Below, one piece after another: positions 1-51,355 of a stretch of DNA of 64,000 bases. The translations under genes and the position numbers were made by a program. Positions within the stretch are counted from its first letter, which is position 1, and every line of letters begins with the position of its first letter. This DNA comes from Laetmonice hystrix (Eukaryota), in assembly GCA_965235115.1 (NCBI GenBank), contig OZ249436.1, forward strand, positions 27,218,001 through 27,282,000. Reading direction: 5' to 3'. The notes under the pieces were generated by a model that did no database searches, was not told the DNA's origin, and worked only from the letters and a program-made list of their open reading frames with translations.

Positions 1-1767
1 GAGGAGGTCCCAATACAACTAGAAATACCAAGAGAGTATAAGTTCAATGCTGACAAGAGTGTAGTGATTGAGACGGAAATTGCCGAAATGATACGTAAAG
101 GTGTTATATATGAAGTGTGGGATGTCAAGCAGTCCTTTGTATCTAACATCTTCACGAGACCTAAGCCTGATGGGAAGGTCAGGGTGATTATTGACCTTAG
201 TGAGTTAATTACCTTTATCAGTAAAAAACATTTCAAGATGGACCATCTAGAGACGGCCACACAGATGATGTTTAGGGGTGCCTGGTTGGCCTCAATTGAC
301 CTTTCCGATGCGTATTATACCCTACCCATCCACCCAGACTTTCAGAGGTATCTTTGCTTCCATTGAGCAGGGAGATTTTTTCAATTCACTTGTCTCCCTT
401 TTGGTATTTCATGTGCTCCTTGGATTTTTACTAAGACGTTGAAACCCATATTTGCAGAGTTTCACAGGAAGGGCCATCATGGGTTTGGATTCATCGATGA
501 TTCCTTCATTATTGCTGAAACCCAGGAGGAGTGTTTAGCGGCGGTCAATGAATTAAAATCGTTATTTGAGAAGCTAGGGTTTAGAATAAATGAAAAGAAG
601 TCGGTCTTACACCCAACACAGGAATTGAAATTTTTGGGATATCTTCTTAATTCCTCTACCATGACAGTGAGTCCTACCCAAGAGAAAATAGAAAAAGTAG
701 TCGAGTCAGTAAAGGCGTTGGTACATTGTAGAAGGGCAAAAATCCGCAGAGTAGCGTCCGTACTTGGCTTGCTAAATGATGTGTGTAAAGCTACAGAATA
801 TGGTTTGGCACATAATAAGAATCTGGAGATCCAAAAAATTAAGGCCTTACAAAGAGCGGGCCCAAAACAGTTTGAGGGGAGCATGTATATAGGTACTGAC
901 TCTGTCACGGACCTAAAATGGTGGGAGAAGAAGTTCCCGAAAGCCTCCAAGAAAATCAGGGAGACCTCTCCAGAATTAAAGTTAATGGTTGATGCTTCTA
1001 ACTTGGGATGGGGAGCATGTTTAAATTCGAAAAGAGCCCAGGGAAGATGGTCAATGCAAGAGACCAAAGGTCATATTAACGTTCTAGAACTACGCGCAGT
1101 ACTCTTAGGCTTAAGGACTTTATGTGCTGATAAGCAGGGTACAGGTATTAGTATCCTTACGGATAGTACCACCGCGGTGGCATATGTATCCCATATGGGG
1201 GGTACCAGGTCAAGGGAGTGTAATAGAGTGGCCCTAGAAATATGGAACTGGTGTGAGCAGCAGGACATTTGGATAACGATTAACCATATCCGTGGAGTTG
1301 ATAATGCGGTAGCGGACTATGAGAGTCGTAATTTCACGGAAAACACAGAGTGGAAATTAGGTCCACACCTGTTTAACCAGATATGTACGTTGTGGGGTAC
1401 CCCCAAAATCGATTTATTTGCATCTAGGGTGAATCATCAACTTCCTAACTATGTCAGCTGGGGACCCGATCCAGGTGCATCCTTCGTCAATGCATTCTCA
1501 AGATCATGGTCGGATCTAGGTTATGTATATGCCTTTCCCCCTTTCAGGCTTCTATTGCGAGTGCTACAGAAAATCCGTCAGGACAAGGTCAAGGGTGTCG
1601 TAGTAGCTCCTGATTGGCCAGCACAACCCTGGCACAGCATTCTACATGCAAGAGCACGGTGCGTCAGGAGCGTTCCCAGGAAAGCGGGAAATCTACACAG
1701 AGTAGTCCCCGCCATCAAGGAGGACAAAACGTTAGAAGACATTCCTCTGATGTTTGCTCTGCTTTAA
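1..1767 (+). pseudogene. DIRS pol: reverse transcriptase + RNase H + Dam-like methyltransferase domain, one premature stop
   Basis: Frame is open from base 1. Motifs: RVIIDL, SIDLSDAY, LPFG..APWIFTK, FIDD, VDASNLGWG, HINVLELRA, DSTTAVAY, IDLFAS...YAFPPF. ORFs 64-366 and 439-1767 share one frame, separated by TGA at 364-366 (probably TGG Trp->TGA). Confidence 0.93.
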
Positions 1768-19523: not shown

Positions 19524-22500
19524 TCAGCCGTCCCTCACACAGGAGATCATCACTTTGATGGCTCCTCCAGCCCCAGTCCGAGCCGTCTCGAACGCCTCCA
19601 GGGTCTGCTCCAGCTTGAAGTGGTGTGTAATCAGGGCCTTGGCGTTCACCTTGCCCGTGGCAATCATGGCCAGGGCCGTTGGGTACCTGCATTTACAAAC
19701 AACCAGATAGAGAAGAAAGTCGATTGATGTAGTGTGGCACTAAAGCTCCCTAAACTAAAGGAATACACGTTGTACCAATTTGAGACTGGTTTTTCCTTCT
19801 TTTCCCCAATGAAAAAAACCTCCGGGAACACGAACGTTTATTACTCACGTATTGGCGTATCTAAAAATTCCACGGATATCAACTTCTCGAACGGCGGCAT
19901 TGACGATTGGCAGTTTGACTTCAGCAGGACCGAGTCCGACGAGCACCATCATCCCACCACTCTTGGTTGCCTGGCGAGTTAAAGTCACCATGGGGTAATG
20001 TATGTGTGGAACAAAATAACAAATGTCCGTGGCTGGACAGGTAACAAAAAGATGGGATATTACGCAGTAGATTTCTTGGTCATAGGTCAGACCATGAAGG
20101 TATTCAAATAGGCGTATCAAGTCTGACTAAAACCATCCAATGATGTCGATCTCTCTATACAGTAATTAATACGTACATAAATGCCAGTTTGGATGCTCGA
20201 TTCAGCTCCACTACATTCAATGGTAATATCGGGCATGCAGCCAAGGGTTTGTTCCACTGTGGTCGCTGTGGCTTTGGCATCCTTACTGTCCACATGGACG
20301 GTGTGATCAGCACCCAGCTCCTTGGCAACCTTAAGGCGGTGCTCAGAAATATCTGTAAACGTTTGGAAACTCTATGGCTTAATCCTTAAAAAATCTAGTA
20401 GATATTACTTAGGATTAATCTAGCTTGCTTTGTTGAAATATGCAAAATATAATTATTATGGAGAGCATATTTGTATCACAACGTCTTCTATCAAAATGGA
20501 ATACAGTAACAATAACATTTAACCTTGATTCTTAAAAGAAGTACTTGAATGAAAAAAACAGAATACATGTATTACTAATATAGACTTGATGGAAAGATCA
20601 CAAGGTCCTTTTCCCGTTCATTCTTATATAGAATATTTTCCAAATCTGACATTCCCTGTCCACTTGATTGCGTTATCTCCTGGCGGCCGTATGACCTGAG
20701 AGACTGACCTGTGATGATGACCTCGGCTGCTCCCATGGCCTTGGCCGTCATCATTGACACCAAGCCGATTGGTCCTGCCCCACACACTAGCACCCTATTA
20801 CCGAGGGTAACTCCGGCCCGGCGGCAGGCGTGGACGCCTACCGACAGCGGCTCCAGCAGGGCTCCCTCCTCGTAACTAACGTGGTCGGGTAACCTGAAAT
20901 CACCGGTCAGTTACAGGTGGTCTGTACAATGTATTGGCTAAATAAAGTACGGCCGGCCAATCGTTATTGTTGATTCTGTTTGCATTCATACTAAAGTGGA
21001 AATGGTGATCTATAGGCCTACCATCAAATTGAAAACACAAAACCCAACTTTCGAATTCATATACAATATTTCTGTTGTTTTCTATAGAAAGCAGCTATTA
21101 ACAACTTGACAATTAACATGTATATTAACAATATACATGAGCAGAGTTGTCTCACTTGAAACAGAAGTCGGCAGTGTGTACAATGAGGCGGGCCAGGCTG
21201 CCGTGGTAGGGCGGGGTGGCATGGAAGGCGATGTCGGGACAAAGGTTGTACCTCCCGCCTTTACAAAAGTCACACCGTCGGCATGGAATTCCCGGCTCCA
21301 TGGCAACCCTGTCTCCTGGCGTGTAGAAAGTACTCGCATACATGACACACTGGGAGCACGCGTATAGGAAATATATAAAACACTGGCAAAGGCGAAAGCT
21401 TTACAATACCGCGTAGGCATATATAGTAGGCCTGATATAGCATAGAGAGGGGGTAGGGTCTACACGGGAACACGCATACTATAATAGGCCTCGAACGCCA
21501 AATTGTGGATACATGTAGGCCTACGTATAATACATGTATAGGCAAAGGTAGTTCTACGAGTATGTCCAACCTTGTGCGACTTGGCATATAAAAGAGTAGG
21601 GGATTGCCTCCCGGTGGCGGGTTTCTTCCCTACTTCATGCTCATCATCACTCCCCTGGACGAGGGGGTGGGGGAGGATAGGTCCCATGACCCTGAACACG
21701 ACTGACTGCCGACTGCATGGGCCTCAACGCCCATATAAATCACTAGTTTTCATGACGAATAATGGAATAATGGTACTTATCTATATATTCATAAATTACA
21801 CGTGTGTGATTTTTTTAGGGAGACACGTGTGTGGTTTTTTGTGATGTGTTTTTTAGGGGAGATAGAAGGAACCGATCTCCACTGTGCACGGGCATCAGGC
21901 TAACCCAGTTCACTCTAAGAATATCCGGAAGGAGGAAAATTTGATAAACTAAGATTAGATATGGATAGGCTCCTATCGAGGAGGCCGAGCACTAACATAG
22001 CATGACCTCAGTCATGCACCAGAACCCTGGCTGGGAATCTGCACCAGAATATTTCAGTGTCAAACCTGTATAGTGTCAATGTCTGGAATCTACCCCACTG
22101 GCGTATCCAGAAAGGGGGGGTCCGAAGTTTAGGTACTTCAGAGATGGCCATTAGCCATGCTCCTCTGGGAAATTAAAAAAAACGACATCAAATAATGCAA
22201 TCTCAGGGCATCTTGTGTGGAAATATGAAGATTTCCTTTGGTTAAGAGCATGCATTTCAGTCCTTTTTTTAATACAAAAATGTCCTTAATATAGTCATTT
22301 TTCCAATGGGGGGGGGGGGGGGGAAGAGTCTGGGAGACTTGGAACCCCTCCTGGATACGCTACTGTACCCCTACACCGCCGGTCAGTGGACTTGATGGAT
22401 ATTTACCAGGCTTGAGGTGGGTGACTCCCTCTCCAACCTTAGTGACCTGACCTGAGGCTTCATGACCCAGGACCATGGGTGCGTTCACCACGAAGTCCCC

Positions 22501-23559
22501 AATCCGCCCGTTCACCAAGTAGTGAACATCAGAACCACATATCCCGACTGAGTGCATGGCAATCTGGACCTCTAAAAGAGAAAAAATAATATTATTATTA
22601 CGTTATACGGAGTAGGGCGGAATTGCAGCAGATGATCTACGATTCCTGTCCATATGGAAATAAATTATTGTGAACCCTTAGAAAATAAGCATAAATGTCC
22701 ATGTTTCCACGCAAGGCAACATCAAAACACTTAAGGAATCGGAATTCTGTACATATTTCCCTGTCAGGTACCAGTAAATGAAAACTATTTATAGAATTTC
22801 TTTACTTACCACCGGGGCCCGGTTCTGGTATAGGGCGTTCTTCCTGTTATAGTCATTAAAAAGGTAAATTTACTTTTACAAACATGTCTCTTTGCCAAGA
22901 CGTTTTATTCATTTGTTTCTAATAATATTAAATAACATTTACCACTAATAACATAAATAAGGATTTCTTTTTTACTGCACTGTTTCCCTTTATGCGTTGC
23001 AATACACAAAGCTGAAAAATTTCAGGCTTTTCGGGGGAATTGAAGCAGGGGCTATAGCATCGAGGTTAGCATTTTGGAAAGAAATTAAGCAAGAAACCCT
23101 TTGAGAGTGACTTTGGAGGGTGCAAATGTATTGATTTTTAAGTAATGGTAATAATGTGGCTTAGATTTGTTTTCTGCCCACACTATTGACCCCCACCGAC
23201 CCCTTTACAGTAACTGGGCCAAAGGTCATGAATGTGTGCCAAACCGCACCACCCAGTTGACACGGCGAACCACCCCTATCATTGGATATAGGCCTACTCG
23301 ATCGTATCTGCACGGAGCTGCCAGAGGCCCTGTAATGCTGCATGCTTTCAAGGGATGAAACGACATAGGCATAGCCTGCTAGTGCTATATAGATACAAAG
23401 ACCAGTGTCGTAACCATGGTAGGTTGAGTGTGCCTTCAGTTCCCTGCAGCCGGGTACACACAACGCTTACCCATCGACCTGCTGGAAACGCCAGTCTATA
23501 CATACCAATCGGAGATCTCCCTTCTTGCGAAGGACGGCAGAGAGGTTGGCGTCTGTCAT
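19524..23559 (-). CDS. SORD: Sorbitol dehydrogenase, complete, 8 exons, 352 aa
   Basis: Exons (-): 23559-23506, 22843-22810, 22571-22407, 21315-21156, 20893-20709, 20352-20177, 19970-19849, 19686-19524. Total 1059 nt, all GT-AG and in phase. Motifs [21 protein letters not shown]...C, GAGPIG, GIFRYAN. Confidence 0.97.
22096..22365. mobile_element. hAT-like MITE, 5-bp TSD, in SORD intron 3; same family as 63085-63370
   Basis: Ends CACTGGCGTATCCAG / CTGGATACGCTACTG; TSD TACCC. Confidence 0.85.
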
Positions 23560-24302
23560 CTTGGAGCTGGTCGTCACAGAAAGACTCGACCCTCGGCTTG
23601 ACGACTCTGGCCTGATGACAAGCGTTCGACTGACCCTTGAACCGACCCAGTTTGTCGAGCCCTGCCTCGTTTCAATGTCACGAGGGGACTCGCGATTGGC
23701 GTATCGTATCACAGCGATAAGTTATGTGCACGAACCCCAGGGAAGCCAGATAAATTACCGAGGTCAAAAGCTTGCAAGCAACAAAATGTTGAATGGAATA
23801 CCTCCATGGATGCGAGATGTGCCCCCATTAAGTAATAACAGAACCCTTTAAAATCCATGTTTATGGATGTTCAGGGGGGGGGGGGGGGGTTATTATTGTT
23901 CCAGGCCACACCTCTCCCCATCCCAGCCAAAGTAATTTACTAGGCTTGTGGCAAGTTTTATCATAATTATGTAGTATAGTAGTAGGTAGAATCTCTGAGG
24001 GATTTTTCTACATAATTACATCCAGGGACAGGCCTCAGGGACAAGGGTGATTCCAGGGTAATTGGGAGATTTTCTTCAATGAGCAATAGAACTACATACT
24101 TCCAGTGGAGCAGGACCCTGTATATACCTCGATATATTAAAGAATGTTTTGATTTCATTTTCTTTAATAAACACAGACATACATAATAGCATATATACAT
24201 AATAGCTAATAAAGCATCAAAATAACTGATGCAGTTTGCTAAATAACGTTTCCCATCATGATGCCTCAAGCCATCTGACAAGATCTGTTGTTACAATGTC
24301 GG

Positions 24303-27300
24303 TTAATCTGGACAGCAGAAAGCTTTCCGAGTAATTGCGTCCCGTGGTGCCTTGAAATTACAGCCGTAGATGTGGTACCCATTCGGTGAATAGCCTGGAC
24401 ACCAGAAGTAACGCTTCCCAGTTCTCTTTCTTCCATTACTAGTATAAAAAACACACACAAAAATGATATGTGTCAATCAACGCATGAAATCTTGCAGTTT
24501 GAGCTAAAAGTATGATAGTTACATCAACTTTAACCAACATTACCAAGTTTTCCACTACCACTAGAGAAAAGAATTCCCAAAATTTGACCAGTCGCCTTAG
24601 TGGTACTCTAAGAAACCAGACCCTCAAAGTTAAAGGTACCAGACTATCCAGTTATGATTCCAATAGCTATATAGCACTAGTATTACCTGAACCGAAGAGC
24701 TCCCTTTTTACATTTCGGGCATCGTGGTGGGACACCGTTTTTCATATAGTCAGCCACTGTGGCAGCCAGGTCAGAATGAGTACCTAGATTGTAGGCAGGC
24801 CGATCATTATACCTGCACAGTTACAGAACAATTCTTTATGCCAGCCAGTGGCTACATAATTAACATAACATAATTTACATAATTTAGTTAAAGAAAACTA
24901 GGGATTGTGGTCTTCATGCCTTTCAAAACTATTCTAATGTACGCATTACAATAAAGTGACTGACTATAGATCGATGCTACATGGACATGACATCAGTGAG
25001 AGATCACATTCGTGGGTCTAAGGAAAAGCATGAAGAAAGTCAGCCATTAGATATTTCACATAAAAGGTCCTACCTTAGAAGCTGTATCAGTGCTTCAACG
25101 TTGAACCATTTCAAACGAGCAGTGGTAGGTGGTTTGCCTGCCTTTGCTTGATCTGTTAACTCACGTGCCAGCTTCTTTGCCTATAATGCCATTAGTGATA
25201 AATGTATTTGTTTTATAACAGAGAATATGAATCATTTCCCTCTTCAGAGCTCAAATAGCTAAGTCCTTGCTGGTATCATAAACAATATCCCATATATCAA
25301 AAGGAACATTAGGAATTAGCTTCAACACACTCCTGCATCACAGCGCAAAGTAATGCTTTCTTTTCGTTTGTGTATTGCCGGTAACTCGGTTTGACCACAG
25401 TTTGATATATATAGTAGAGCCCAGACACAAATGTAATTCTTCCACTTCAGACGAGTGTCACTTACCTCTTGAGAGAGATTCAAAACGAAAGTGTGACCCA
25501 GAGAGTTGCGATACATTTCTCGCCCAGACCCAGTTGGGTCCTCAATCTGCACGATTCCTTCAGCCTGGAGAGCAGGGTCTTCTCCATCATCTCCACCTCC
25601 AGGGTCCTCATCCAGCAACTCTCCATCAGCCTGGAGAGCAGAGTCTACTCCATCATCTCCACCTCCAGGGTCCTCATCCAGCAACTCTCCATCAGCCTGG
25701 AGAGCAGAGTCTACCCCATCATCTCCACCTCCAGGGTCCTCATCCAGCAACTCTCCATCAGCCTGGAGAGCAGGGTCTTCTCCATCATCTCCACCTCCAG
25801 GGTCCTCATCCAGCAACTCTCCATCAGCCTGGAGAGCAGGGTCTTCTCCATCATCTCCACCTCCAGGGTCCTCATCCAGCAACTCTCCATCAGCCTGGAG
25901 AGCAGAGTCTACTCCATCATCTCCACCTCCAGGGTCCTCATCCAGCAACTCTCCATCAGCCTGGAGAGCAGGGTCTTCTCCATCATCTCCACCTCCAGGG
26001 TCCTCATCCAGCAACTCTCCATCAGCCTGGAGAGCAGAGTCTACTCCATCATCTCCACCTCCAGGGTCCTCATCCAGCAACTCTCCATCAGCCTGGAGAG
26101 CTGAGTCTACCCCATCATCTCCACCTCCAGGGTCCTCATCCAGCAACTCTCCATCAGCCTGGAGAGCAGAGTCTACTCCATCATCTCCACCTCCAGGGTC
26201 CTCATCCAGCAACTCTCCATCAGCCTGGAGAGCAGAGTCTACTCCATCATCTCCACCTCCAGGGTCCTCATCCAGCAACTCTCCATCAGCCTGGAGAGCA
26301 GAGTCTACTCCATCATCTCCACCTCCAGGGTCCTCATCCAGCAACTCTCCATCAGCCTGGAGAGCTGAGTCTACCCCATCATCTCCACCTCCAGGGTCCT
26401 CATCCAGCAACTCTCCATCAGCCTGGAGAGCAGAGTCTACTCCATCATCTCCACCTCCAGGGTCCTCATCCAGCAACTCTCCATCAGCCTGGAGAGCAGA
26501 GTCTACTCCATCATCTCCACCTCCAGGGTCCTCATCCAGCAACTCTCCATCAGCCTGGAGAGCAGAGTCTACTCCATCATCTCCACCTCCAGGGTCCTCA
26601 TCCAGCAACTCTCCATCAGCCTGGAGAGCAGGGTCTTCTCCATCATCTCCACCTCCAGGGTCCTCATCCAGCAACTCTCCATCAGCCTGGAGAGCAGAGT
26701 CTACCCCATCATCTCCACCTCCAGGGTCCTCATCCAGCAACTCTCCATCAGCCTGGAGAGCAGGGTCTTCTCCATCATCTCCACCTCCAGGGTCCTCATC
26801 CAGCAACTCTCCATCAGCCTGGAGAGCAGGGTCTTCTCCATCATCTCCACCTCCAGGGTCCTCATCCAGCAACTCTCCATCAGCCTGGAGAGCTGAGTCT
26901 ACCCCATCATCTCCACCTCCAGGGTCCTCATCCAGGAAACCTCTGCCAGTCAGTGTAGCCACTTCTACATCAGGTTCAGCATCTGTTTCCTTCTGCTGCA
27001 TTTTCCGCTTTGTTAAATGTGCTGTAAATTCTGTTTTAGTGTCTGACTGTTCAGAGACTCCGCAGTCTGTTCTACATACTGTGGATACATCATTTGTCAT
27101 GTCATAAAGCTTCCTTTTAGACCCTTTAGTGTTTCCTCTGTCGTGTATGGGTAATGTACACTGCCCCTCAGTTTTTTGTGGACTTATCAATTTTGCTTTA
27201 TCCATTTTTGCTTTGAGCTTACCACTTAATGTGGTTTTGAAGTAGCTCGAACTATTCATTTCTCTCCTTCGGCACTGGTTTGTAGGTAAAATATTGTCTT

Positions 27301-27357
27301 TTGTGTATGGGGTTATAAAATTATAATCTTTGGAGTTTCCTTCATTATAGTCAGCGT
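24303..27357 (-). CDS. Acidic tandem-repeat protein ending in a PARP1 PADR1/Zn3-like zinc-binding domain (no PARP catalytic domain); 5' exons uncertain
   Basis: GT-AG exons in consistent phase: 27357-25466, 25180-25074, 24812-24687, 24438-24303 (stop TAA). C-terminus NVEALIQLLRYND...VADYMKNGVPPRCPKCKKGALRFS...YFWCPGY...GCNFKAPRDAITRKAF aligns by eye to PARP1 LKELLIFN...VADGMVFG..CEECSGQLVF..YYCTG...KC...RKEW. Confidence 0.75.
25555..26935 (-). repeat. 66-bp coding tandem repeat, 21 units (DEDPGGGDDG[VDS/EDP]ALQADGELL)
   Basis: Period 66 nt; the - strand frame is continuous with the flanking unique exon sequence. Confidence 0.97.
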
Positions 27358-27422
27358 CTGAAATTAATTTAATGAAAGTAAGTACAACTGTATTCATATT
27401 TGCGGTATAATATAGGCCTATG

Positions 27423-27599
27423 CAGTGACGTAGCCAGGAATTAGTGAAAGGGGGAGGGCGTAAAAGGGGGCGTAAATTTTTTAAAGAAAAATCTGACAAG
27501 CAAAAAAAAAACAAACAAAAAAGTCTTCAACAATGCAAAAAAAAAGAGAAAAAAAAACCAAAAGGGGGGGGCATACGCCCTATGGTGGCTACGTCACTG
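27423..27599. mobile_element. hAT-like MITE, 5-bp TSD (duplicated at 28840-29016)
   Basis: TIR CAGTGACGTAGCCA / TGGCTACGTCACTG; TSD CTATG. Confidence 0.88.
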
Positions 27600-27630
27600 C
27601 TATGTACATATCAACAAACTGGTAATCACA

Positions 27631-29047
27631 GCTCCATCAGCCTGGAGAGCAGAGTCTACTCCATCATCTCCACCTCCAGGGTCCTCATCCAGCAACTCTC
27701 CATCAGCCTGGAGAGCAGAGTCTACTCCATCATCTCCACCTCCAGGGTCCTCATCCAGCAACTCTCCATCAGCCTGGAGAGCAGAGTCTACTCCATCATC
27801 TCCACCTCCAGGGTCCTCATCCAGCAACTCTCCATCAGCCTGGAGAGCTGAGTCTACCCCATCATCTCCACCTCCAGGGTCCTCATCCAGCAACTCTCCA
27901 TCAGCCTGGAGAGCAGAGTCTACTCCATCATCTCCACCTCCAGGGTCCTCATCCAGCAACTCTCCATCAGCCTGGAGAGCAGAGTCTACTCCATCATCTC
28001 CACCTCCAGGGTCCTCATCCAGCAACTCTCCATCAGCCTGGAGAGCAGAGTCTACTCCATCATCTCCACCTCCAGGGTCCTCATCCAGCAACTCTCCATC
28101 AGCCTGGAGAGCAGGGTCTTCTCCATCATCTCCACCTCCAGGGTCCTCATCCAGCAACTCTCCATCAGCCTGGAGAGCAGAGTCTACCCCATCATCTCCA
28201 CCTCCAGGGTCCTCATCCAGCAACTCTCCATCAGCCTGGAGAGCAGGGTCTTCTCCATCATCTCCACCTCCAGGGTCCTCATCCAGCAACTCTCCATCAG
28301 CCTGGAGAGCTGAGTCTACCCCATCATCTCCACCTCCAGGGTCCTCATCCAGGAAACCTCTGCCAGTCAGTGTAGCCACTTCTACATCAGGTTCAGCATC
28401 TGTTTCCTTCTGCTGCATTTTCCGCTTTGTTAAATGTGCTGTAAATTCTGTTTTAGTGTCTGACTGTTCAGAGACTCCGCAGTCTGTTCTACATACTGTG
28501 GATACATCATTTGTCATGTCATAAAGCTTCCTTTTAGACCCTTTAGTGTTTCCTCTGTCGTGTATGGGTAATGTACACTGCCCCTCAGTTTTTTGTGGAC
28601 TTATCAATTTTGCTTTATCCATTTTTGCTTTGAGCTTACCACTTAATGTGGTTTTGAAGTAGCTCGAACTATTCATTTCTCTCCTTCGGCACTGGTTTGT
28701 AGGTAAAATATTGTCTTTTGTGTATGGGGTTATAAAATTATAATCTTTGGAGTTTCCTTCATTATAGTCAGCGTCTGAAATTAATTTAATGAAAGTAAGT
28801 ACAACTGTATTCATATTTGCGGTATAATATAGGCCTATGCAGTGACGTAGCCAGGAATTAGTGAAAGGGGGAGGGCGTAAAAGGGGGCGTAAATTTTTTA
28901 AAGAAAAATCTGACAAGCAAAAAAAAAACAAACAAAAAAGTCTTCAACAATGCAAAAAAAAAGAGAAAAAAAAACCAAAAGGGGGGGGCATACGCCCTAT
29001 GGTGGCTACGTCACTGCTATGTACATATCAACAAACTGGTAATCACA
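27631..29047. repeat. 1417-bp tandem duplication of the exon 5' half + MITE + intron segment (11 repeat units)
   Basis: Unique sequence at 26933-27630 recurs at +1417. Junction is ...GGTAATCACA|GCTCCATCAG at 27630/27631. Confidence 0.9.
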
Positions 29048-37778: not shown

Positions 37779-40505
37779 CTATGTATCTGCACACTTTGCA
37801 CGCCTGCCTCGTTTTCTGGTTACAAGAGTTACTTTTTGATGGGGTTCCACTGAGGAGTCTGATTGCGAGCTGTTACCATTTTCTTTATGGTGGTCTATTT
37901 TATGGGCAAGAAGGGACGATCGTTGAACGAAAGCTTTACTACATAACTCACAGCTGTACACTTTCATCTTCAGTTGCAGGGGGTCATGGTCATCGTCCTC
38001 AAGGGACGCATCACTGTCAGCACTACCGGCACTGCTGCGACATTTTCCATTGTCACTGCGATCATTGTCAGTGCTATCACTCAGCACGCTGCCGTCACTA
38101 CTTGCACAGTCATTATTATTAGCATCATCTTCCTCCATACTGCCATCCTCCTCCTCTGCCTCCTGAACAGTTTCATCTTTCACTTCCAAACTTCTCAAAT
38201 CACCTTCATCGTATTCACTCTCTGGCTGACCATTATCGGAGCCACACGTTTCTCTCTCCTCCCCTTCCGTGGCTGTATCATTGGAGAGGTCAGACCCTGA
38301 TTCTGCCTCCCTGTTCCCATCTTCTGACTCCTCGCCATCAGTTTCAGGATCAACCTCTCCCACCTCTTCCTCCTCCTGCCCATTTTCAACATCATCAGAC
38401 TCACTCTGCTCACTACTGTTGTTATCTCTGTCCGACACATTTCCTTCATCACCAGAGTCATCCTCCGACTCACTAGGAGTTTCCCGAACTGCCTGCACAG
38501 CTGCATCTTTTAACCTGCATTCTTCCTCCTCTTGGTAGAGTTCCTCCGTCTGCACATACTGCTGACTTTTTGTGACTTGGCTTTGGGAATTTTGGTCATC
38601 TTGACCAGCAGTGTGCTCGCCTTCCTCGTCTCCCTCGTCAAATGTTTCTTCATCTGAGCCTGCCTCACTCTGCTGATCATCATCTTGTTCTCCCTGATGG
38701 GAGCTTTCATCAGAGGTGCTCTCGTCATCTGCTGAGACTGAGTCCTCCCCATCATCATCTTCAGCATCACTACGGACGTTATTTGTTTCATTCTGAGGAC
38801 TGTGTCCACTGATCTCGGACTCTCCTTCGTTGAGAGACTCATCATCGAGTTGTTCATTCCCTTCCCATTCCCCACTATTTTCATCACCATCATGATCATG
38901 AGGGTCTTCAGAATCATCACCATGCTCTTGTTCTTGTGACATAATATTCCGCAGACTGCTTCTCGTAACCCTCCGTTGAGGAAGAGGCCCCCCACGGATG
39001 GCCATACCTCCTCGCTGCCGACATCCCCCTCTCATGAAAAGACACTTTTCTTGTTCTTTTCTTATGCTAGCCACTACTTCGTTAAGATCTATGTGGTTGA
39101 CGTTACTCTTCCCACCTCTCTGCCGGGCTCTTCCTCTTCCCCGCGATGATTTCTTTCTACTTGGTTGTGATGGACTAACTTCCATGGGGACATCAGGTTG
39201 GGGCTCTCCTTGTCCTTCATGGGAATGTTCTGGTCTATCTGAATCTACTTGTGTCTCTTGATTCACTTTCAATGATTTCACCACTATTGAATCTGATATT
39301 TGTACATCACCTCTCCGTTTTTTTCCTTTTCTCTGTGTCACTGTATCAGTTTCTTCTCCTCCCTCCTTCTCCTCCTCAGCCTGATCAGCTGAGCTTGTAT
39401 CCATAGCCTCCTCCACTCCTGCCTGATCTGACACGTTCTTCGCTTCCTTTCCTTGGCACTTGGCCAGGTCTTCAACTACAATTACCACAGTCCCTTCCTG
39501 CACTTCTTCACCATTTGAAGCATTCTTGGATTTTTGTTTGTTTGCTAATCGCCGTCTTTCTTTTGCCTTTCTTTGTATACGGCGTTCTTTCTCCTTCTCA
39601 ACTTTAGCATCAAATCCCTGCTCATGGATTTTAAGATGAGCGTCGAGACAGAAAGCCCAGCGGAACGACTGCTTGCAGATGTGACATTCATGAGGCTTTT
39701 CAAAGACGGGATTTTGGGAAACAGGTTTCTGGACCGGTTGTACTTCAAGTTTAACACCGGCCTCCTGCTTCATTTCAAGTCCATCCTCTTCATGGCCTTT
39801 CATGTGGGCTTCTAGGGTGAAGGAATACTTGAAGGACTGATTGCACACGCGACATTTGAAAACCCTGTCTTCTTCTTCATCATCTGCGGCCTCCTCTTTC
39901 ACGACATTGATGTCTGGAAGTAAAGGTGTAGACAGGGCTCCCATGGATTTATAAAGCTCACGTCTTTTTTCTCTCTCTTCCTGTTCACGCCGTTCCTGTT
40001 CCCTCTTTTCTTGTTCCTTCATTTCCTTCTTGTGAATTTTGTTGTGAATTGCCAAGCCTGCTGCATCTCTGAATGATTCATGGCAGATCATACAAGCATG
40101 GGGCTTTTCAATGTGCGTGTGAAGATGCTTCTTGAGATTTTCATGCCATGAGAATTGGATTCCACACGTTCCACATTTGTAGGGTTTTTGTCCGGTGTGA
40201 TCCTGTACATGGTGTTCCTCAAGAACGCGGTGATTACGAAACACCTTTTTGCATATGTCACAAGTCACATACTTTTTGCCCTCTTTATTGTGGACATGCA
40301 TATGACGTTTGAATTGGTTTTCATTATTGAAGTTCTTATCACAGTTAGGACAGTAAAACGTCTGCCTCTCCCTGTGAGACCACTGATGAACAAGAAGTTC
40401 CCGCCGCGAGCTAAAGATTTTGCCACACATACTGCAGGCCAGGGGATTTTGTGCAGGAATTGTGAGACTAACAATCTCAAGAGGCTTGGTCTCATCCTCT
40501 GCCAT
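37779..40505 (-). CDS. C2H2 zinc-finger protein (8 fingers, long acidic disordered region), single coding exon, 908 aa
   Basis: Intact ORF with Kozak-like caacATGG and an upstream acceptor at 40554-40555. Five clustered N-terminal fingers, two isolated, one C-terminal. Candidate AATAAA on - strand at ~33983 implies a ~3.8-kb 3'UTR. Confidence 0.93.
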   Translation of the reverse strand: MAEDETKPLEIVSLTIPAQNPLACSMCGKIFSSRRELLVHQWSHRERQTFYCPNCDKNFNNENQFKRHMHVHNKEGKKYVTCDICKKVFRNHRVLEEHHVQDHTGQKPYKCGTCGIQFSWHENLKKHLHTHIEKPHACMICHESFRDAAGLAIHNKIHKKEMKEQEKREQERREQEEREKRRELYKSMGALSTPLLPDINVVKEEAADDEEEDRVFKCRVCNQSFKYSFTLEAHMKGHEEDGLEMKQEAGVKLEVQPVQKPVSQNPVFEKPHECHICKQSFRWAFCLDAHLKIHEQGFDAKVEKEKERRIQRKAKERRRLANKQKSKNASNGEEVQEGTVVIVVEDLAKCQGKEAKNVSDQAGVEEAMDTSSADQAEEEKEGGEETDTVTQRKGKKRRGDVQISDSIVVKSLKVNQETQVDSDRPEHSHEGQGEPQPDVPMEVSPSQPSRKKSSRGRGRARQRGGKSNVNHIDLNEVVASIRKEQEKCLFMRGGCRQRGGMAIRGGPLPQRRVTRSSLRNIMSQEQEHGDDSEDPHDHDGDENSGEWEGNEQLDDESLNEGESEISGHSPQNETNNVRSDAEDDDGEDSVSADDESTSDESSHQGEQDDDQQSEAGSDEETFDEGDEEGEHTAGQDDQNSQSQVTKSQQYVQTEELYQEEEECRLKDAAVQAVRETPSESEDDSGDEGNVSDRDNNSSEQSESDDVENGQEEEEVGEVDPETDGEESEDGNREAESGSDLSNDTATEGEERETCGSDNGQPESEYDEGDLRSLEVKDETVQEAEEEDGSMEEDDANNNDCASSDGSVLSDSTDNDRSDNGKCRSSAGSADSDASLEDDDHDPLQLKMKVYSCELCSKAFVQRSSLLAHKIDHHKENGNSSQSDSSVEPHQKVTLVTRKRGRRAKCADT

Positions 40506-44420: not shown

Positions 44421-44597
44421 NNNNNNNNNNNNNNNNNNNNNNNNNNNNNNNNNNNNNNNNNNNNNNNNNNNNNNNNNNNNNNNNNNNNNNNNNNNNNNNN
44501 NNNNNNNNNNNNNNNNNNNNNNNNNNNNNNNNNNNNNNNNNNNNNNNNNNNNNNNNNNNNNNNNNNNNNNNNNNNNNNNNNNNNNNNNNNNNNNNNN
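44421..44597. other. Assembly gap (N run)
   Basis: 177 N bases. Confidence 1.
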
Positions 44598-47295: not shown

Positions 47296-50200
47296 ATGGC
47301 TTTGAGATACATCATCATCGCAATTTTGGTGATTCATAAAATAACAGGTTAGTTTTTACATTAAATATTATACTTATGAGGTTCTTGGCAGCTTTTGTGA
47401 ATGTGTTTTTATTGTATTCCTTCACTGTTCTGTAATTTTACCCCATTTTAATTTGTTTCGAGCTTCACTGCACTCTAGTTCCAGTAAAAACTATTCGTGA
47501 ATGCTGAAAGCGAATTTGACGTGTGTGGGGGGAGGCACTGCTGGATCCAGGGGGGTGTTCCTTATCATGTCGTTAGCTTGTCGTATCGTTAACTCCAATG
47601 TATTTTCAATGGGAATTTTAACGCACGACAAGATAACGACAGATGAGGAACGCACCCCAGGGGCGCTAAGGGGGCCTCAGCCCCCCTAAATTCTGGACGA
47701 TGTTATTTTTATCATACAATCATACAACAATATGTTCTTGGTGTGTCTGTGTGATATACATAAAGTTTGATATACTGGTACAGGGTACACGGTACGTAAG
47801 CCTATACTACACCGATCAGTAAATTTTATATAGGCACATGTTTTGAATGATTTGATGACATGCAATTACTAACATCCCATCTTCCGGCCGCTCCCAATCC
47901 ACCATAAACGTTCCTCATTTAAGGTTCAACAATAATTAAACAAATTCATTCTATTGCTTGCTTTAGGTGTCTGTGGTCGCCACTGGTTTTTGGGCCCCAC
48001 AGTTCAAGACAGCAGCACGTGTGGGCAGACGGCCGAACTTCCTTGCCCTCACATTGAGTGCCTTCGGGGCAGGCTTCGATCTTCTGACGATGTGTTTGTG
48101 TTGGCATCGAATGGTATTCTGCAACACTGCACGGACGAACCGATAGACGTTTCGGTAAACATATTGGGATACAATGGAGTTCCACAGCTAGCATGCGAGG
48201 AAGGCCTCACTCATAAGTCGAATATCACTTCTTTCAGCATCTTAATGTTTGGTGCGACCAATGAGTTGTTCTTGGACATCCGCATTGAAGGCATTGCATT
48301 TTCTTCGGGCTATATACGTGGTGGTAATAACCTGGCATTGGAGATTTCAAATTGCATTTTTGATGCCAATTCAACACTTGAAATAGGGGCGGGGCAGTCC
48401 GTCCACTCTACGATTTTGCCATGCCAATCATTGTTCTTAACGTTGAAGTCTACAATCTCTTACTCTATTTTGAAGAGCTTACGGGATACGTTTCAATACC
48501 AGAATATTGTTTTAGAATGTGATAGAATATACTTCAAAGCAGAAGACAACAACTTTTCAGACAATGGCATCAGAGTTCATGGTAGGGCCTTTCTATATAT
48601 AAAAGCCGACAACCTCACGTTCCATCAGAAAGGAGTCGCCATAACGAGTGATCATATGGGTGGAATCAGAGCAACTTGTCCGGTGAAAGCATGCGTTATA
48701 GAGATAACCAATTCCCAGTTTATTGGTCTAAAACCTTACAATGGCGCTATCACATACCTCGATGTAGATGCAATGAAAAGGGCACCGTTAGAAGTTCATA
48801 TCGTACTACCATTGGATGTTTTGCGTGAGCCCAACTCGGTGCGAATACAACTCTACAATGACTCTTTTCTGGGAGGCCAAGGCGCAGTTGTAGTCAGGGG
48901 GCATGTAGATGAACTGTCGATTCAGCATTGTTCATTTGAAAAGAATGCTGCACAAAAGAAGGGAGGAGCTTTGTATGTCTCAAACTCTATGCGAAATACT
49001 AATATCACCATAACAAACAGCGTCTTCACTGGCAATATAGCAGGTACGTACAGTGGACAGTACGAAAAGGGGGAGGACACCCAACCTATAGAGATAATTA
49101 CAACGGAGGGAGAAAAATTACAAATCATGTACTATTCGTTTACAGAAATGAGCGGGAAATTCTTGATCGCCAGATCCAGGGATAACAGCACGACTGACTT
49201 CCATGTAGATTCCGCGGGTCAGGGCGGTGCATTGCTAATTGAAAACGGAAAGGTTTTCATTTCAAATTGCTCTTTCGTTGGAAATATGGCCAGTCGATCT
49301 GGATCTACAGCAAAGATATGGTCTCGAACATCTGTCGATATATCACACTCGAATTTTATGACATATAACAGAATGACGTTTACTGAATTTCTAACAGTCT
49401 CAAGTTTGCTTCTTAGGATAGAGAATACCAGTTTTAAGTTCTTATCTTTAGACAGGGATATCCGTATACTTGGGTACATGTGGGAAAAAGGCGGGCAAAT
49501 AGATTTTACCCATGTAAGCCTCGATTGCCCTCGTGGATTTGAACTAAGTTCATATAAAACTACCGTAGGTTATAACCATGGCTCGATGGGAAGGAAATAT
49601 TATTCTTTCCACTACATGTGTGCGATGTGTGACGATGGAAAGTATTCCATTTATCAGGGATCACAATATATTGTTTTTGCTGACAACGTGACGGGACCCA
49701 GTTCAATTATGTGCAAGGATTGTCCTTATGGCGGTGTCTGCTACGGATGGTCTGTGTCATCTAGCAAAGATTATTGGGGGATCAGGACGGGAGACAGTGT
49801 ACGATTCTTCAAGTGTCCGTCTAACTACTGCTGTCCTAACATTATTGAGCCCACGTATTCCTCCTGTTGTGGACACAGGATGGGACGTCTGTGTGGAAAA
49901 TGCAGCAAAGGATACTCGCAGGCATTGTTCACGTCGACCTGCGTTAAAACAGAAAAATGTGACGATTACTGGATTATTGCAGTGGCCTTTACTAGTGCAG
50001 TTTTATATGCATCTTTTCTTATATTTCAAGGGATGTTCAAAACGTTCATTTTCATGCGTCGGAAACCATGCAAGGACACGACAACGTCATCTGTCGCCGA
50101 AGTTGACAGAACAAAAAATGAGGCATTAAGAGACGCTGATTCGTCATATGATTATACCTTCCTTATTTTGCTCTTTTATTATTTCCAGGATGCAACGTTG

Positions 50201-51355
50201 CTCACCATTAACACCACATATCAGACACCCTACCCGGCAGCCACACACCCCGCCATAAGGAATGCTATTGGTCAGCTCTTTCAGTTCAGACTGGAGTTAT
50301 ACCAGATATTCTTCCCCCTGGTGTGCGTTTTCCCTCGGTTAAAATCATTTCACCAGGTCATGTTCAAAACTCTATTCGTACCAATCCTGTGGTCGGTCTT
50401 GATAATTATATACTTATGCATCCGCTTTGTATCCATCAAAAGACCCAATTCAACATCATGGGAAACCCTGAGGGACCACTGCAGCGTGGCCTTCTTTTTG
50501 GCGTCGCTTTTCTCGTATCAAAAAATGTCGGTTAGCACCTTCATTTTGATCAAATGCGTCGACATACTGGGGAAACGGTACTTGTTCATTGATGCAACAA
50601 TTTCATGCTTTCAACTATGGCAAATCGGACCCTTCATTGTGTTGGTTATCTTCATTGTGCCTTTTTGCTTATTGCTCATGGCAGGACCAATATTGCTTCA
50701 GAGAGGTTATATTTCACATCGAGTTTTTATTTGTGCTTGTATTATCCCACTGCCTTTCCTTCTCTTCTGGCTGTATCGGTTTTACATGAGGCCAAATAGA
50801 ACTGACCCATCTCTGCCCATCTCGACTCAGGCCAAAGCCGCCTATGCGGCAATAGGCGGTGCCTTCAAGGAAATGTACCTTCCTATAATTAAAGTACCCT
50901 TCTCGTGGGCTGGTGTTCCTATCAGCCGTCGCTTGCTACTTATAGTGGCTGACGCTTTCATCAGTGACACACTTCAGAAAATGCTTTTTGCAAACGGTGT
51001 GTGCATTCTATACTTGTGCATCCAAGTGGGTGTTTGTCCATATAAGAATATCGCGTCCAACATAAGTAGCACCGCCTCGTCTCTTGCGCTGCTAACAATA
51101 GCCCTTATAAACCTTATCCGGTCAGCATACGAATCTGCTGGAAGGTTACCCGACGTTCCACACATGACAATAATTTACCATCTGCAAATCCTAGATGATA
51201 TTTTGCTCTTTTGGTTTCCTGTTGTTGGTGTAAGTGTAATTGTTTCTATGCTAATTCTACGTCTTTTAGTTGTCCTTTTCAAGTGTCTAAAACGTCGGTG
51301 CAACCCTACAATGCGTGTTTCAGTGGTAGAGAACGAAAGAACTACTCGTCTCTGA
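47296..51355 (+). CDS. Large surface protein: signal peptide + Pmp-like GGA/FxxN beta-helix repeats + Cys-rich module + ~9-10 TM helices, ~1146 aa
   Basis: Exon 1 47296-47347 (MALRYIIIAILVIHKIT, GT donor, phase 1) joins acceptor 47965-47966 in frame with the 3.4-kb ORF. Motifs FEKN..KKGGAL, FTGN, GQGGAL, FVGN; C..CP.GGVC...DYWG...CP..YCC...R.G.LCGKC..GYS; then hydrophobic helices. Confidence 0.88.

What the first reader, a model, noticed from the sequence alone, without database searches (positions are those of the whole stretch)
24303..27357. Stand-alone PARP1 Zn3/PADR1 domain fused to a 21x acidic repeat, with no catalytic domain
Seen: three small exons missed by the ORF track splice in phase onto the giant repeat exon. 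They encode the helical part (L..LL..N...VAD.M..G) and all four Cys of a zinc ribbon (CPKC...WCPG...GC), followed by a stop. Known: PADR1/Zn3 normally sits inside PARP1, where it relays DNA-break binding from Zn1 to WGR/CAT; no Zn1, Zn2, BRCT, WGR or CAT sequence is visible here. Inference: a PARP1-derived module paired with ~460 aa of Asp/Glu-rich repeat could act as a decoy or modulator of PARP1 assembly, a PAR/DNA mimic, a histone chaperone or an ADP-ribosylation sponge. I cannot say whether it is already catalogued.
Basis: partly seen in the sequence, partly recalled or inferred. Interest (0 to 1): 0.82.

Follow-up and report, generated by a model that had tools for sequence, protein, structure and literature searches.

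The report
Spliced zinc-ribbon gene with acidic repeat
This is a real, expressed and conserved gene for a non-enzymatic protein whose small C-terminal zinc-binding module probably descends from the third zinc finger of PARP1, and which in this species alone has gained a 462-residue acidic repeat.

Summary
One spliced contig from run X4 shows all three predicted junctions (25466/25180, 25074/24812, 24687/24438) and stops about 114 nt past the TAA. X4 is not labelled as RNA; I infer that from the splicing. The window holds no WGR or PARP catalytic sequence. The canonical PARP1 lies on another chromosome. The 66-bp repeat has 20.9 copies at 97% identity, codes 21 units of 22 aa, and occurs nowhere else in the genome.

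Two other organisms carry orthologues. One has the same four exons and the same intron phases, and encodes a basic 225-aa protein with no repeat. All four Cys and an NGRKRxGKRY hairpin are conserved. Exon 3 has dN 0.16 with dS saturated.

The PADR1 label is only partly supported:
- On exon pieces, Pfam gives 14.4 bits for the first zinc knuckle only, below the cut-off.
- A profile of the orthologues matches this genome's PARP1 Zn3 at 11.3 bits (P about 1e-5, one targeted test), mostly through the helical part.
- The intron inside the ribbon sits at the same Pfam profile position and phase as in PARP1.
- The second half of the ribbon has GRF-like spacing and motif instead.

Pfam and structure prediction on the joined sequence could not be run. 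Function is inferred. The PARP1-decoy idea is untested. No earlier scan note other than this same finding bore on it.

The parts
24303..24438 (-). Exon 4. It codes the invariant basic hairpin NGRKRxGKRY, Cys3 (WCPGY), Cys4 and a short basic tail, then stop TAA at 24305-24303.
   Evidence: frame, AG acceptor; RNA contig joint 24438|24687; 56% identity to the L018 exon, with both Cys and the hairpin invariant.
24189..24302 (-). 3' UTR as far as the RNA contig reaches. An ATTAAA signal lies just beyond it at 24168-24163.
   Evidence: contig piece 24189-24438; sequence.
24439..24686 (-). Intron 3 (248 nt, GT-AG, phase 2 inside a Ser codon AG|T). It splits the zinc ribbon at the same Pfam profile position and phase as the intron in this genome's PARP1.
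   Evidence: both pieces end at PF08063 profile position 15.
24687..24812 (-). Exon 3. It codes the end of the helical part (YNDR ... LAATVADYMKNG) and the first zinc knuckle CPKC plus the strand ALRF.
   Evidence: orthologues at 78% and 56% identity; 20 invariant columns; dN 0.16, dS saturated; PF08063, 14.4 bits.
24813..25073 (-). Intron 2 (261 nt, GT-AG, phase 2 inside an Arg codon). Position and phase are conserved in L018.
25074..25180 (-). Exon 2. It codes a basic linker and the start of the helical part (GKPPT ... LIQLLR).
   Evidence: (L018 counterpart).
25181..25465 (-). Intron 1 (285 nt, GTAAGT...AG, phase 0).
25466..27259 (-). Coding part of exon 1, from the first in-frame ATG (27259-27257, A at -3). 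It codes a 108-aa basic N-terminus, the acidic array and a 27-aa linker. The exon reaches at least 27360 in RNA.
   Evidence: The true transcript start was not determined.
25556..26935 (-). Coding minisatellite of 66 bp x 20.9 copies (97% identical). It gives 21 units of 22 aa in two main variants (14 + 6 + 1), with 174 acidic and 0 basic residues. It is found only at this locus.
27631..29047 (-). Upstream tandem duplicate. 28189-29047 is 100% identical to 26772-27630 (5' region, N-terminal coding part and the first repeats). It carries its own array of 10.9 repeats (27632-28352) and an ORF that ends without the zinc module.
   Evidence: Not checked against long reads; it could be a real recent duplication or an assembly error.

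Best explanation
This is an expressed, conserved, four-exon gene for a non-catalytic protein of about 720 aa. The protein has three parts. The first is a short basic N-terminus with a motif, [ST]L..KLK.K.D..K, that is shared with an orthologue. The second is a disordered middle, which in this species has been inflated by a locus-specific coding minisatellite into 462 residues of pure acid; this shifts the whole protein from about pI 9 in the orthologue to about pI 4. The third is a basic C-terminal module of about 95 aa, made of two or three helices that run straight into a C4 zinc ribbon. The module is most likely a distant, free-standing relative of the PARP1 Zn3 (PADR1) domain. It differs by a conserved basic insertion of 6-8 residues (NGRKRxGKRY) in the ribbon hairpin and by a longer second loop, which give the ribbon GRF-like spacing. 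Shown here: the transcript structure, the conservation, purifying selection, the lack of any PARP enzyme part, and the lineage-specific origin of the repeat. Inferred: the module is the functional core and acts as a zinc-dependent binding domain in the nucleus, for nucleic acid, poly(ADP-ribose) or a protein partner, using the invariant basic hairpin. Also inferred: the acidic array is a recent add-on that may mask that basic surface or bind basic proteins, and is not part of the ancestral function.
For: Transcript: a spliced contig with all three junctions that ends 114 nt after the stop, and the 5' coding part held in the same run. No WGR or PARP catalytic match in the window, and canonical PARP1 elsewhere. 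Conservation: exon 3 orthologues at 78% and 56% identity. L018 has the same four exons and phases, 51% identity over the C-terminal 122 aa, and all four Cys and the hairpin invariant. dN is 0.16 with dS saturated and the introns unalignable. The only exonic heterozygous SNP, at 24785, is synonymous (plus the sequence). PADR1 relation: the top Pfam hit of the exon 3 piece is PF08063 (E 0.034). The orthologue profile scores 11.3 bits against the own PARP1 Zn3 (P 1.4e-5; 0 of 20000 shuffles). The helical part alone scores 8.6 bits (P 1e-4; 1 of 3444 decoy ORFs reaches it). Thirty genuine SAP loci of this genome reach at most 3.4 bits. The block VAD.M..G....C..C..L.[FY] has the same spacing in both proteins apart from one extra residue in this gene, and the intron is shared at PF08063 profile position 15/16, phase 2, in the codon AG|T. 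Repeat. The repeat is absent from L018.
Against: Pfam thresholds are not met on the pieces. PADR1_N is not detected, and the exon 4 piece hits nothing. The orthologue pieces do not hit PF08063; one of them weakly prefers DUF6510 and a GIR1 ribbon. The ribbon half does not match the PARP1 ribbon (P 0.05). It matches five GRF fingers of this genome slightly better (P 5e-4 to 0.016). The Cys spacing is x2/x20/x12, against x2/x14/x9 in the own PARP1. Unbiased searches do not retrieve PARP1. The P of 1e-5 comes from one targeted test of a hypothesis picked by eye; corrected for about 25000 families it would not be significant. X4 is not labelled as RNA. No structure prediction or full-domain Pfam scan could be run. 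No functional data exist.
Confidence: 0.6

Rival explanations
1. The C-terminal module is not a PADR1 relative. It would be a GRF-type, or otherwise distinct, zinc ribbon preceded by an unrelated pair of helices. That would make the protein a small single-stranded-nucleic-acid binder with no PARP ancestry.
For: The Cys2-Cys3 spacing of 20 is close to the 18 between the corresponding Cys in the one own-genome GRF finger measured, against 14 in the own PARP1. The motif GKRYFWCP lines up residue for residue with G[RK]xF[YF]xCP of the GRF fingers in this genome, and C-x-F follows Cys4. The ribbon profile scores all five own GRF fingers at P 5e-4 to 0.016, against 0.05 for the PARP1 ribbon. No Pfam PADR1 threshold is met.
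Against: The exon 4 piece gives no PF06839 hit. GRF fingers have no VAD.M..G helix running into the first knuckle, whereas this block matches PARP1 with almost the same spacing. The helical part matches the PARP1 Zn3 helices at P 1e-4, and SAP controls fail. The intron position and phase are shared with PARP1. The two large GRF ORFs of this genome are uninterrupted at that point.
Confidence: 0.25
2. One reading: the free Zn3 module docks onto PARP1 (Zn1/WGR/HD) in trans as a decoy or modulator of PARP1 activation, and the acidic array acts as a DNA or PAR mimic, a histone chaperone or an ADP-ribosylation sponge.
For: There is only the remote similarity to Zn3. From established knowledge, Zn3 makes interdomain contacts needed for PARP1 activation (abstract of PMC10281051). 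The array carries about -174 charge.
Against: Similarity to the own PARP1 Zn3 is low and confined to the fold core. The Trp before Cys4 (WTKC in the own PARP1), which from my own knowledge is a key interdomain contact, is replaced by IYGC or FYSC. The orthologue has no acidic array, so the pairing is not ancestral. No binding test was run.
Confidence: 0.1
3. The locus is a decaying or neutral transcript: an orphan ORF whose repeat expansion and upstream duplication reflect instability or mis-assembly rather than a working gene.
For: An 859-bp stretch at 100% identity is duplicated just upstream, which could be an assembly error. The repeats are 97% identical, so the expansion is very recent. 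The L018 orthologue reads GG instead of GT at the exon 3 donor. No annotated protein of this family exists in the searched collections.
Against: The frame is intact across four exons. The contig depth is 103, against 23 for the neighbouring spliced contig, though contig depth is a poor measure of expression. There is strong purifying selection and the Cys residues are invariant across saturated synonymous divergence. Only the acidic frame stays open through the whole array on the coding strand.
Confidence: 0.05

Closest known systems
PARP1 third zinc-binding domain (Zn3; Pfam PADR1_N PF21728 + Zn_ribbon_PADR1 PF08063)
   Same: A helical segment runs directly into a C4 zinc ribbon. The block VAD.M..G....C..C..(.)L.[FY] has the same spacing, apart from one extra residue in this gene. 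The LL..N motif sits in the preceding helix. The intron is at the same Pfam profile position and phase. The profile match to this genome's own PARP1 Zn3 has P about 1e-5 in a targeted test.
   Different: The module is free-standing, with no Zn1, Zn2, BRCT, WGR or catalytic domain. Pfam thresholds are not met. The hairpin carries a 6-8 residue basic insertion and the second loop is 3 residues longer (spacing x20/x12 against x14/x9). The Trp before Cys4 is absent. The module sits at the C-terminus of a small charged protein.
GRF-type zinc ribbon (Pfam PF06839; the fingers of APE2, TOP3A and NEIL3, from my own knowledge)
   Same: The Cys2-Cys3 spacing is about 20. The motif G-[KR]-x-[YF]-[FY]-x-C-P and the C-x-F after Cys4 are present. 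The surface is basic. There are weak profile matches to all five GRF fingers of this genome.
   Different: There is no Pfam hit. The first knuckle is CPxC with PADR1-like context. The FF.W end motif is incomplete. A conserved helical part precedes the ribbon, which GRF fingers lack.
Non-catalytic PADR1/zf-PARP proteins of Tetrahymena (PMC6502085)
   Same: These are proteins that carry PADR1 without a PARP catalytic domain, so the domain is already known outside the enzyme.
   Different: They combine PADR1 with zf-PARP fingers and come from a ciliate. Here there is no zf-PARP, the genome appears to be an animal's (not established here), and the N-terminal half is different.

Membership tests
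PADR1 / PARP1 Zn3 (PF08063 + PF21728) | Zn_ribbon_PADR1 (PF08063) match above the gathering score of 25.1 bits | tested here: inconclusive
   Only exon pieces could be scanned. The exon 3 piece scores 14.4 bits (E 0.034, profile 2-15) and the exon 4 piece hits nothing. The own PARP1 pieces score 18.8 and 38.6 bits. The joined domain could not be submitted.
PADR1 / PARP1 Zn3 (PF08063 + PF21728) | PADR1_N helical subdomain immediately N-terminal to the ribbon | tested here: inconclusive
   There is no PF21728 hit on the pieces, because the motif is split by intron 2. In a script, the orthologue profile scores 8.6 bits against the own PARP1 helical part (P 1e-4). One of 3444 decoy ORFs reaches that score, and SAP controls reach at most 3.4 bits.
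PADR1 / PARP1 Zn3 (PF08063 + PF21728) | Four Cys zinc ligands in ribbon order (C-x2-C ... C ... C) | tested here: met
   All four Cys are present and invariant in the orthologues. The spacers are longer than in PARP1: x20/x12 against x14/x9.
PADR1 / PARP1 Zn3 (PF08063 + PF21728) | Three-dimensional fold of Zn3 (a helical subdomain packed on a zinc ribbon) | not testable with these tools
   The spliced sequence has no reference, and the tools refuse read-through of stops. The structure prediction was therefore left out.
PARP1 enzyme (clade 1 PARP) | WGR and PARP catalytic domains in the same gene | tested here: not met
   No PF05406 or PF00644 match falls in C1:27218001-27282000. The transcript contig ends 114 nt after the stop.
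GRF zinc ribbon (PF06839) | PF06839 match above 25.9 bits | tested here: inconclusive
   There is no hit on the pieces. The locus is not among the 6 genome-wide matches. In a script, the ribbon profile scores the five own GRF fingers at 1.8-6.7 bits (P 5e-4 to 0.016).
SAP motif (PF02037) | Helix-extended loop-helix motif that matches SAP | tested here: not met
   There is no Pfam hit. ORFs from 30 genuine SAP loci of this genome reach at most 3.4 bits against the helical profile.

The most novel reading that the evidence does not exclude
A free-standing descendant of the PARP1 Zn3 domain, conserved in a poorly sampled group of organisms, that acts in trans on PARP1 allostery or on PAR or DNA-break signalling. 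In this species it is coupled to a roughly -170-charge DNA-mimicking tail that arose within one lineage as a coding minisatellite.
Probability: 0.1. Interest if true: 0.85.

Novelty: new variant of a known kind. Interest (0 to 1): 0.5.

Why it matters
PADR1/Zn3 was long described as confined to PARP enzymes (PMC2964712). Its only documented role is to hold PARP1's domains together on a DNA break. A conserved protein that keeps only this module would show that the module can work on its own. It would also give a natural tool to ask what the module binds. The locus further shows a coding minisatellite that turned a basic protein of about 225 aa into a 720-aa polyanion within one lineage. That is a clean case for studying how disordered acidic arrays arise and are tolerated. 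If the module turns out to be GRF-like instead, the gene is an ordinary lineage-restricted zinc-ribbon protein.

Tried and rejected
- Pfam on single exon pieces gave only sub-threshold ribbon hits.
- A PDB sequence search with the exon 3 piece, and one with the three-species profile, returned no PARP1 and only generic knuckles.
- An ESM Atlas feature search on the exon 3 and exon 4 pieces returned generic small zinc ribbons or nothing.
The N-terminal region found nothing. The own PARP1 PADR1_N exon found one near-identical exon fragment only, so no PADR1 family profile could be built. The exon 4 ORF found nothing.
- The metagenome scan with the exon 3 alignment found 11 loci. Ten are sirtuin-like proteins, PriA-like helicases and other unrelated proteins that share only the PPRCPKC knuckle; I rejected them. 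One is the known L019 contig.
- A search of the own genome with the exon 3 profile scored only 6 candidates, and PARP1 was not among them. This is uninformative.
- SAP-motif reading of the helices: rejected by the control.
- The repeat as a dispersed satellite: rejected, because it is unique to this locus.
- A paper search for the accession numbers of the orthologue contigs found nothing.
- Left out because the spliced protein has no reference and long letters must not be typed: Pfam/HHpred and AlphaFold on the joined C-terminus, fold search, and an exact look-up of the transcript-derived protein.
- Complex prediction was not used, because only fragments could be supplied.

Full report
**Observation.**
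The region 24303-27514 on the minus strand holds one long ORF whose centre is a tandem array. Reading the sequence gives four exons: 25466-27259 or further upstream, 25074-25180, 24687-24812 and 24303-24438. All introns are GT-AG. The phases (0, 2, 2) join into one frame that ends at TAA 24305-24303. Tandem Repeats Finder reports 66 bp x 20.9 copies at 97% identity over 25556-26935. In protein this is 21 units of 22 aa in two main variants (14 + 6 + 1), with 174 Asp/Glu and no Lys/Arg. The repeat DNA occurs nowhere else in the 627-Mb genome.

**Expression.**
Four runs of one sample hold the stretch. Three behave as DNA, with unspliced contigs. The fourth, X4, has 58 Mb of contigs and behaves as RNA, although its kind is not on record.
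- One X4 contig (depth 103) covers exactly the predicted exons with zero depth in the introns.
- Its joints are 24438|24687, 24812|25074 and 25180|25466, each CT..AC on the plus strand.
- The contig ends at 24189, 114 nt after the stop. An ATTAAA signal follows at 24168-24163.
- A separate spliced contig starts at 23570 and belongs to another gene downstream.
- X4 also holds every sampled word of 26940-27360, so the N-terminal coding part is transcribed.

**No enzyme part.**
Genome-wide scans with the PARP catalytic and WGR models find no match in the window's interval. The canonical PARP1 (PADR1, WGR and catalytic exons) lies at C3:31.271-31.278 Mb. Exons 3 and 4 are single-copy in the genome.

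**Conservation.**
A full scan of 1.84 billion representative proteins with the exon 3 piece found two exon-ORF hits, at 78% and 56% identity. Both lie on host-like contigs in metagenome assemblies.
- L018 (6 kb) carries the same four exons with the same intron phases.
- L018 encodes a 225-aa basic protein (pI 9.3) that has no tandem repeat.
- Its C-terminal 124 aa are 51% identical to the window's C-terminal 122 aa.
- All four Cys and the hairpin NGRKRxGKRY are invariant.
- A short N-terminal motif is also shared weakly (score 46, reached by 11 of 1000 shuffles).
- Between the window and L017, exon 3 has dN 0.16 while synonymous sites are saturated and the flanking introns cannot be aligned.
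- The one heterozygous exonic difference in the DNA runs, at 24785, is synonymous (plus the sequence).

The gene is therefore under purifying selection, and the acidic array is a lineage-specific addition. One oddity remains: in L018 the exon 3 donor reads GG rather than GT.

**Is the module PADR1?**
The joined sequence has no reference, so Pfam, the PDB search and structure prediction could only see single exons.

On the exon pieces:
- The exon 3 piece has Zn_ribbon_PADR1 as its top Pfam hit, but at 14.4 bits (E 0.034, profile positions 2-15).
- The exon 4 piece hits nothing, and PADR1_N is not detected.
- The matching pieces of this genome's own PARP1 score 18.8, 38.6 and 53.2 bits.
- The orthologue pieces do not hit PF08063.
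- PDB searches and an own-genome profile search do not retrieve PARP1.

I then spliced this genome's PARP1 Zn3 from its exons and tested it in scripts against a profile built from the joined orthologues:
- The score was 11.3 bits, P 1.4e-5 for the single comparison, reached by none of 20000 shuffles.
- The helical part alone gives 8.6 bits (P 1e-4). One of 3444 decoy ORFs reaches that score.
- ORFs from thirty genuine SAP loci of the same genome reach at most 3.4 bits.
- The aligned block VAD.M..G....C..C..(.)L.[FY] has the same spacing in both proteins, apart from one extra residue in this gene.
- By Pfam's own coordinates, both genes are interrupted after profile position 15, in phase 2, within a Ser codon AG|T.

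**Against PADR1 membership.**
- The ribbon half does not match the PARP1 ribbon (P 0.05).
- The Cys spacing is x2/x20/x12, against x2/x14/x9 in the own PARP1.
- GKRYFWCP and the C-x-F after Cys4 line up with the GRF fingers of this genome. All five of those fingers score at P 5e-4 to 0.016.

My reading is a distant Zn3 relative with a basic insertion in the hairpin, at about 60%. A GRF-like or separate ribbon family is the main rival, at about 25%. The P values come from a targeted test of a hypothesis chosen by eye. They would not survive correction for all Pfam families.

**Mechanism.**
Shown: the protein has no catalytic part and a conserved zinc module. The orthologue is basic overall, while the window's protein has pI 4.05 because of the array.

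Inferred: the module is the working part, a zinc-dependent binding domain that uses the invariant basic hairpin. Several short basic clusters would fit nuclear import. The acidic array may mask that surface or bind basic proteins.

The decoy model is weak. Similarity to PARP1 Zn3 is confined to the fold core. The Trp before Cys4 of PARP1 is not kept. The array is not ancestral.

**Known context.**
PADR1 was described as restricted to clade 1 PARPs (PMC2964712). Non-catalytic proteins with PADR1 plus zf-PARP are reported in Tetrahymena (PMC6502085). Zn3 is described as maintaining interdomain contacts (abstract of PMC10281051). I found no description of a PADR1-only protein in an animal, but the literature search was narrow.

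**Verdict.**
The gene is a new variant of a known kind of module, of moderate interest, pending a fold test on the joined sequence.

Noticed in passing
window 26772-27630 and 28189-29047; array 27632-28352: A 1417-bp tandem duplication lies just upstream of the gene. An 859-bp stretch (5' region, N-terminal coding part and the first repeats) is 100% identical in both copies. The upstream copy has 10.9 repeats and an ORF (27600-28931) that ends without the zinc module. It is either a very recent duplication or an assembly error.
   Followed up: partly
window 22500-23570, minus strand: A separate spliced RNA contig (depth 23) has exons 23570-23505, 22842-22810 and 22571 onwards, with GT-AG joints. 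It belongs to a different gene that starts about 620 nt downstream of this one.
   Followed up: no
L018:1690-1695 (also L019): In the more distant orthologue the donor of the ribbon intron reads GG instead of GT, although exon 4 is intact and conserved. This could be a non-canonical splice site, a polymorphism or incipient decay.
   Followed up: no
L014 (G000:C20:7290537-7290638, minus strand): This is the best non-self match to exon 4 in the genome (35% identity, E 0.57; 12.6 bits against the ribbon profile). It has GY.TY.C.FKAP but lacks Cys3, and it lies next to a (DVGHETQ)n repeat. It may be a decayed relative or a chance match.
   Followed up: partly
L002 (G000:C1:64901364-64901432, plus strand): A 35-aa open frame scores 20.9 bits on Zn_ribbon_PADR1. 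It has C-x2-C-x12-C followed by PG, which is PARP1-like spacing, and it is not part of the canonical PARP1 locus.
   Followed up: no
window 24441, 24785, 24820, 24981, 25269 and indels at 24515, 24631: The DNA runs of the same sample differ from the window at these places. One difference is exonic and synonymous, and the rest are intronic. They are probably the second haplotype.
   Followed up: partly
window 37779-40505 (-), 47954-51355 (+), 439-1767 (+): The large single-exon ORFs nearby are a C2H2 zinc-finger protein, a protein with a right-handed beta-helix region that scores just below the Pfam cut-off, and a reverse-transcriptase fragment.
   Followed up: partly
window 44421-44597: A run of 177 N, either an assembly gap or masked. 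It was left untouched.
   Followed up: no
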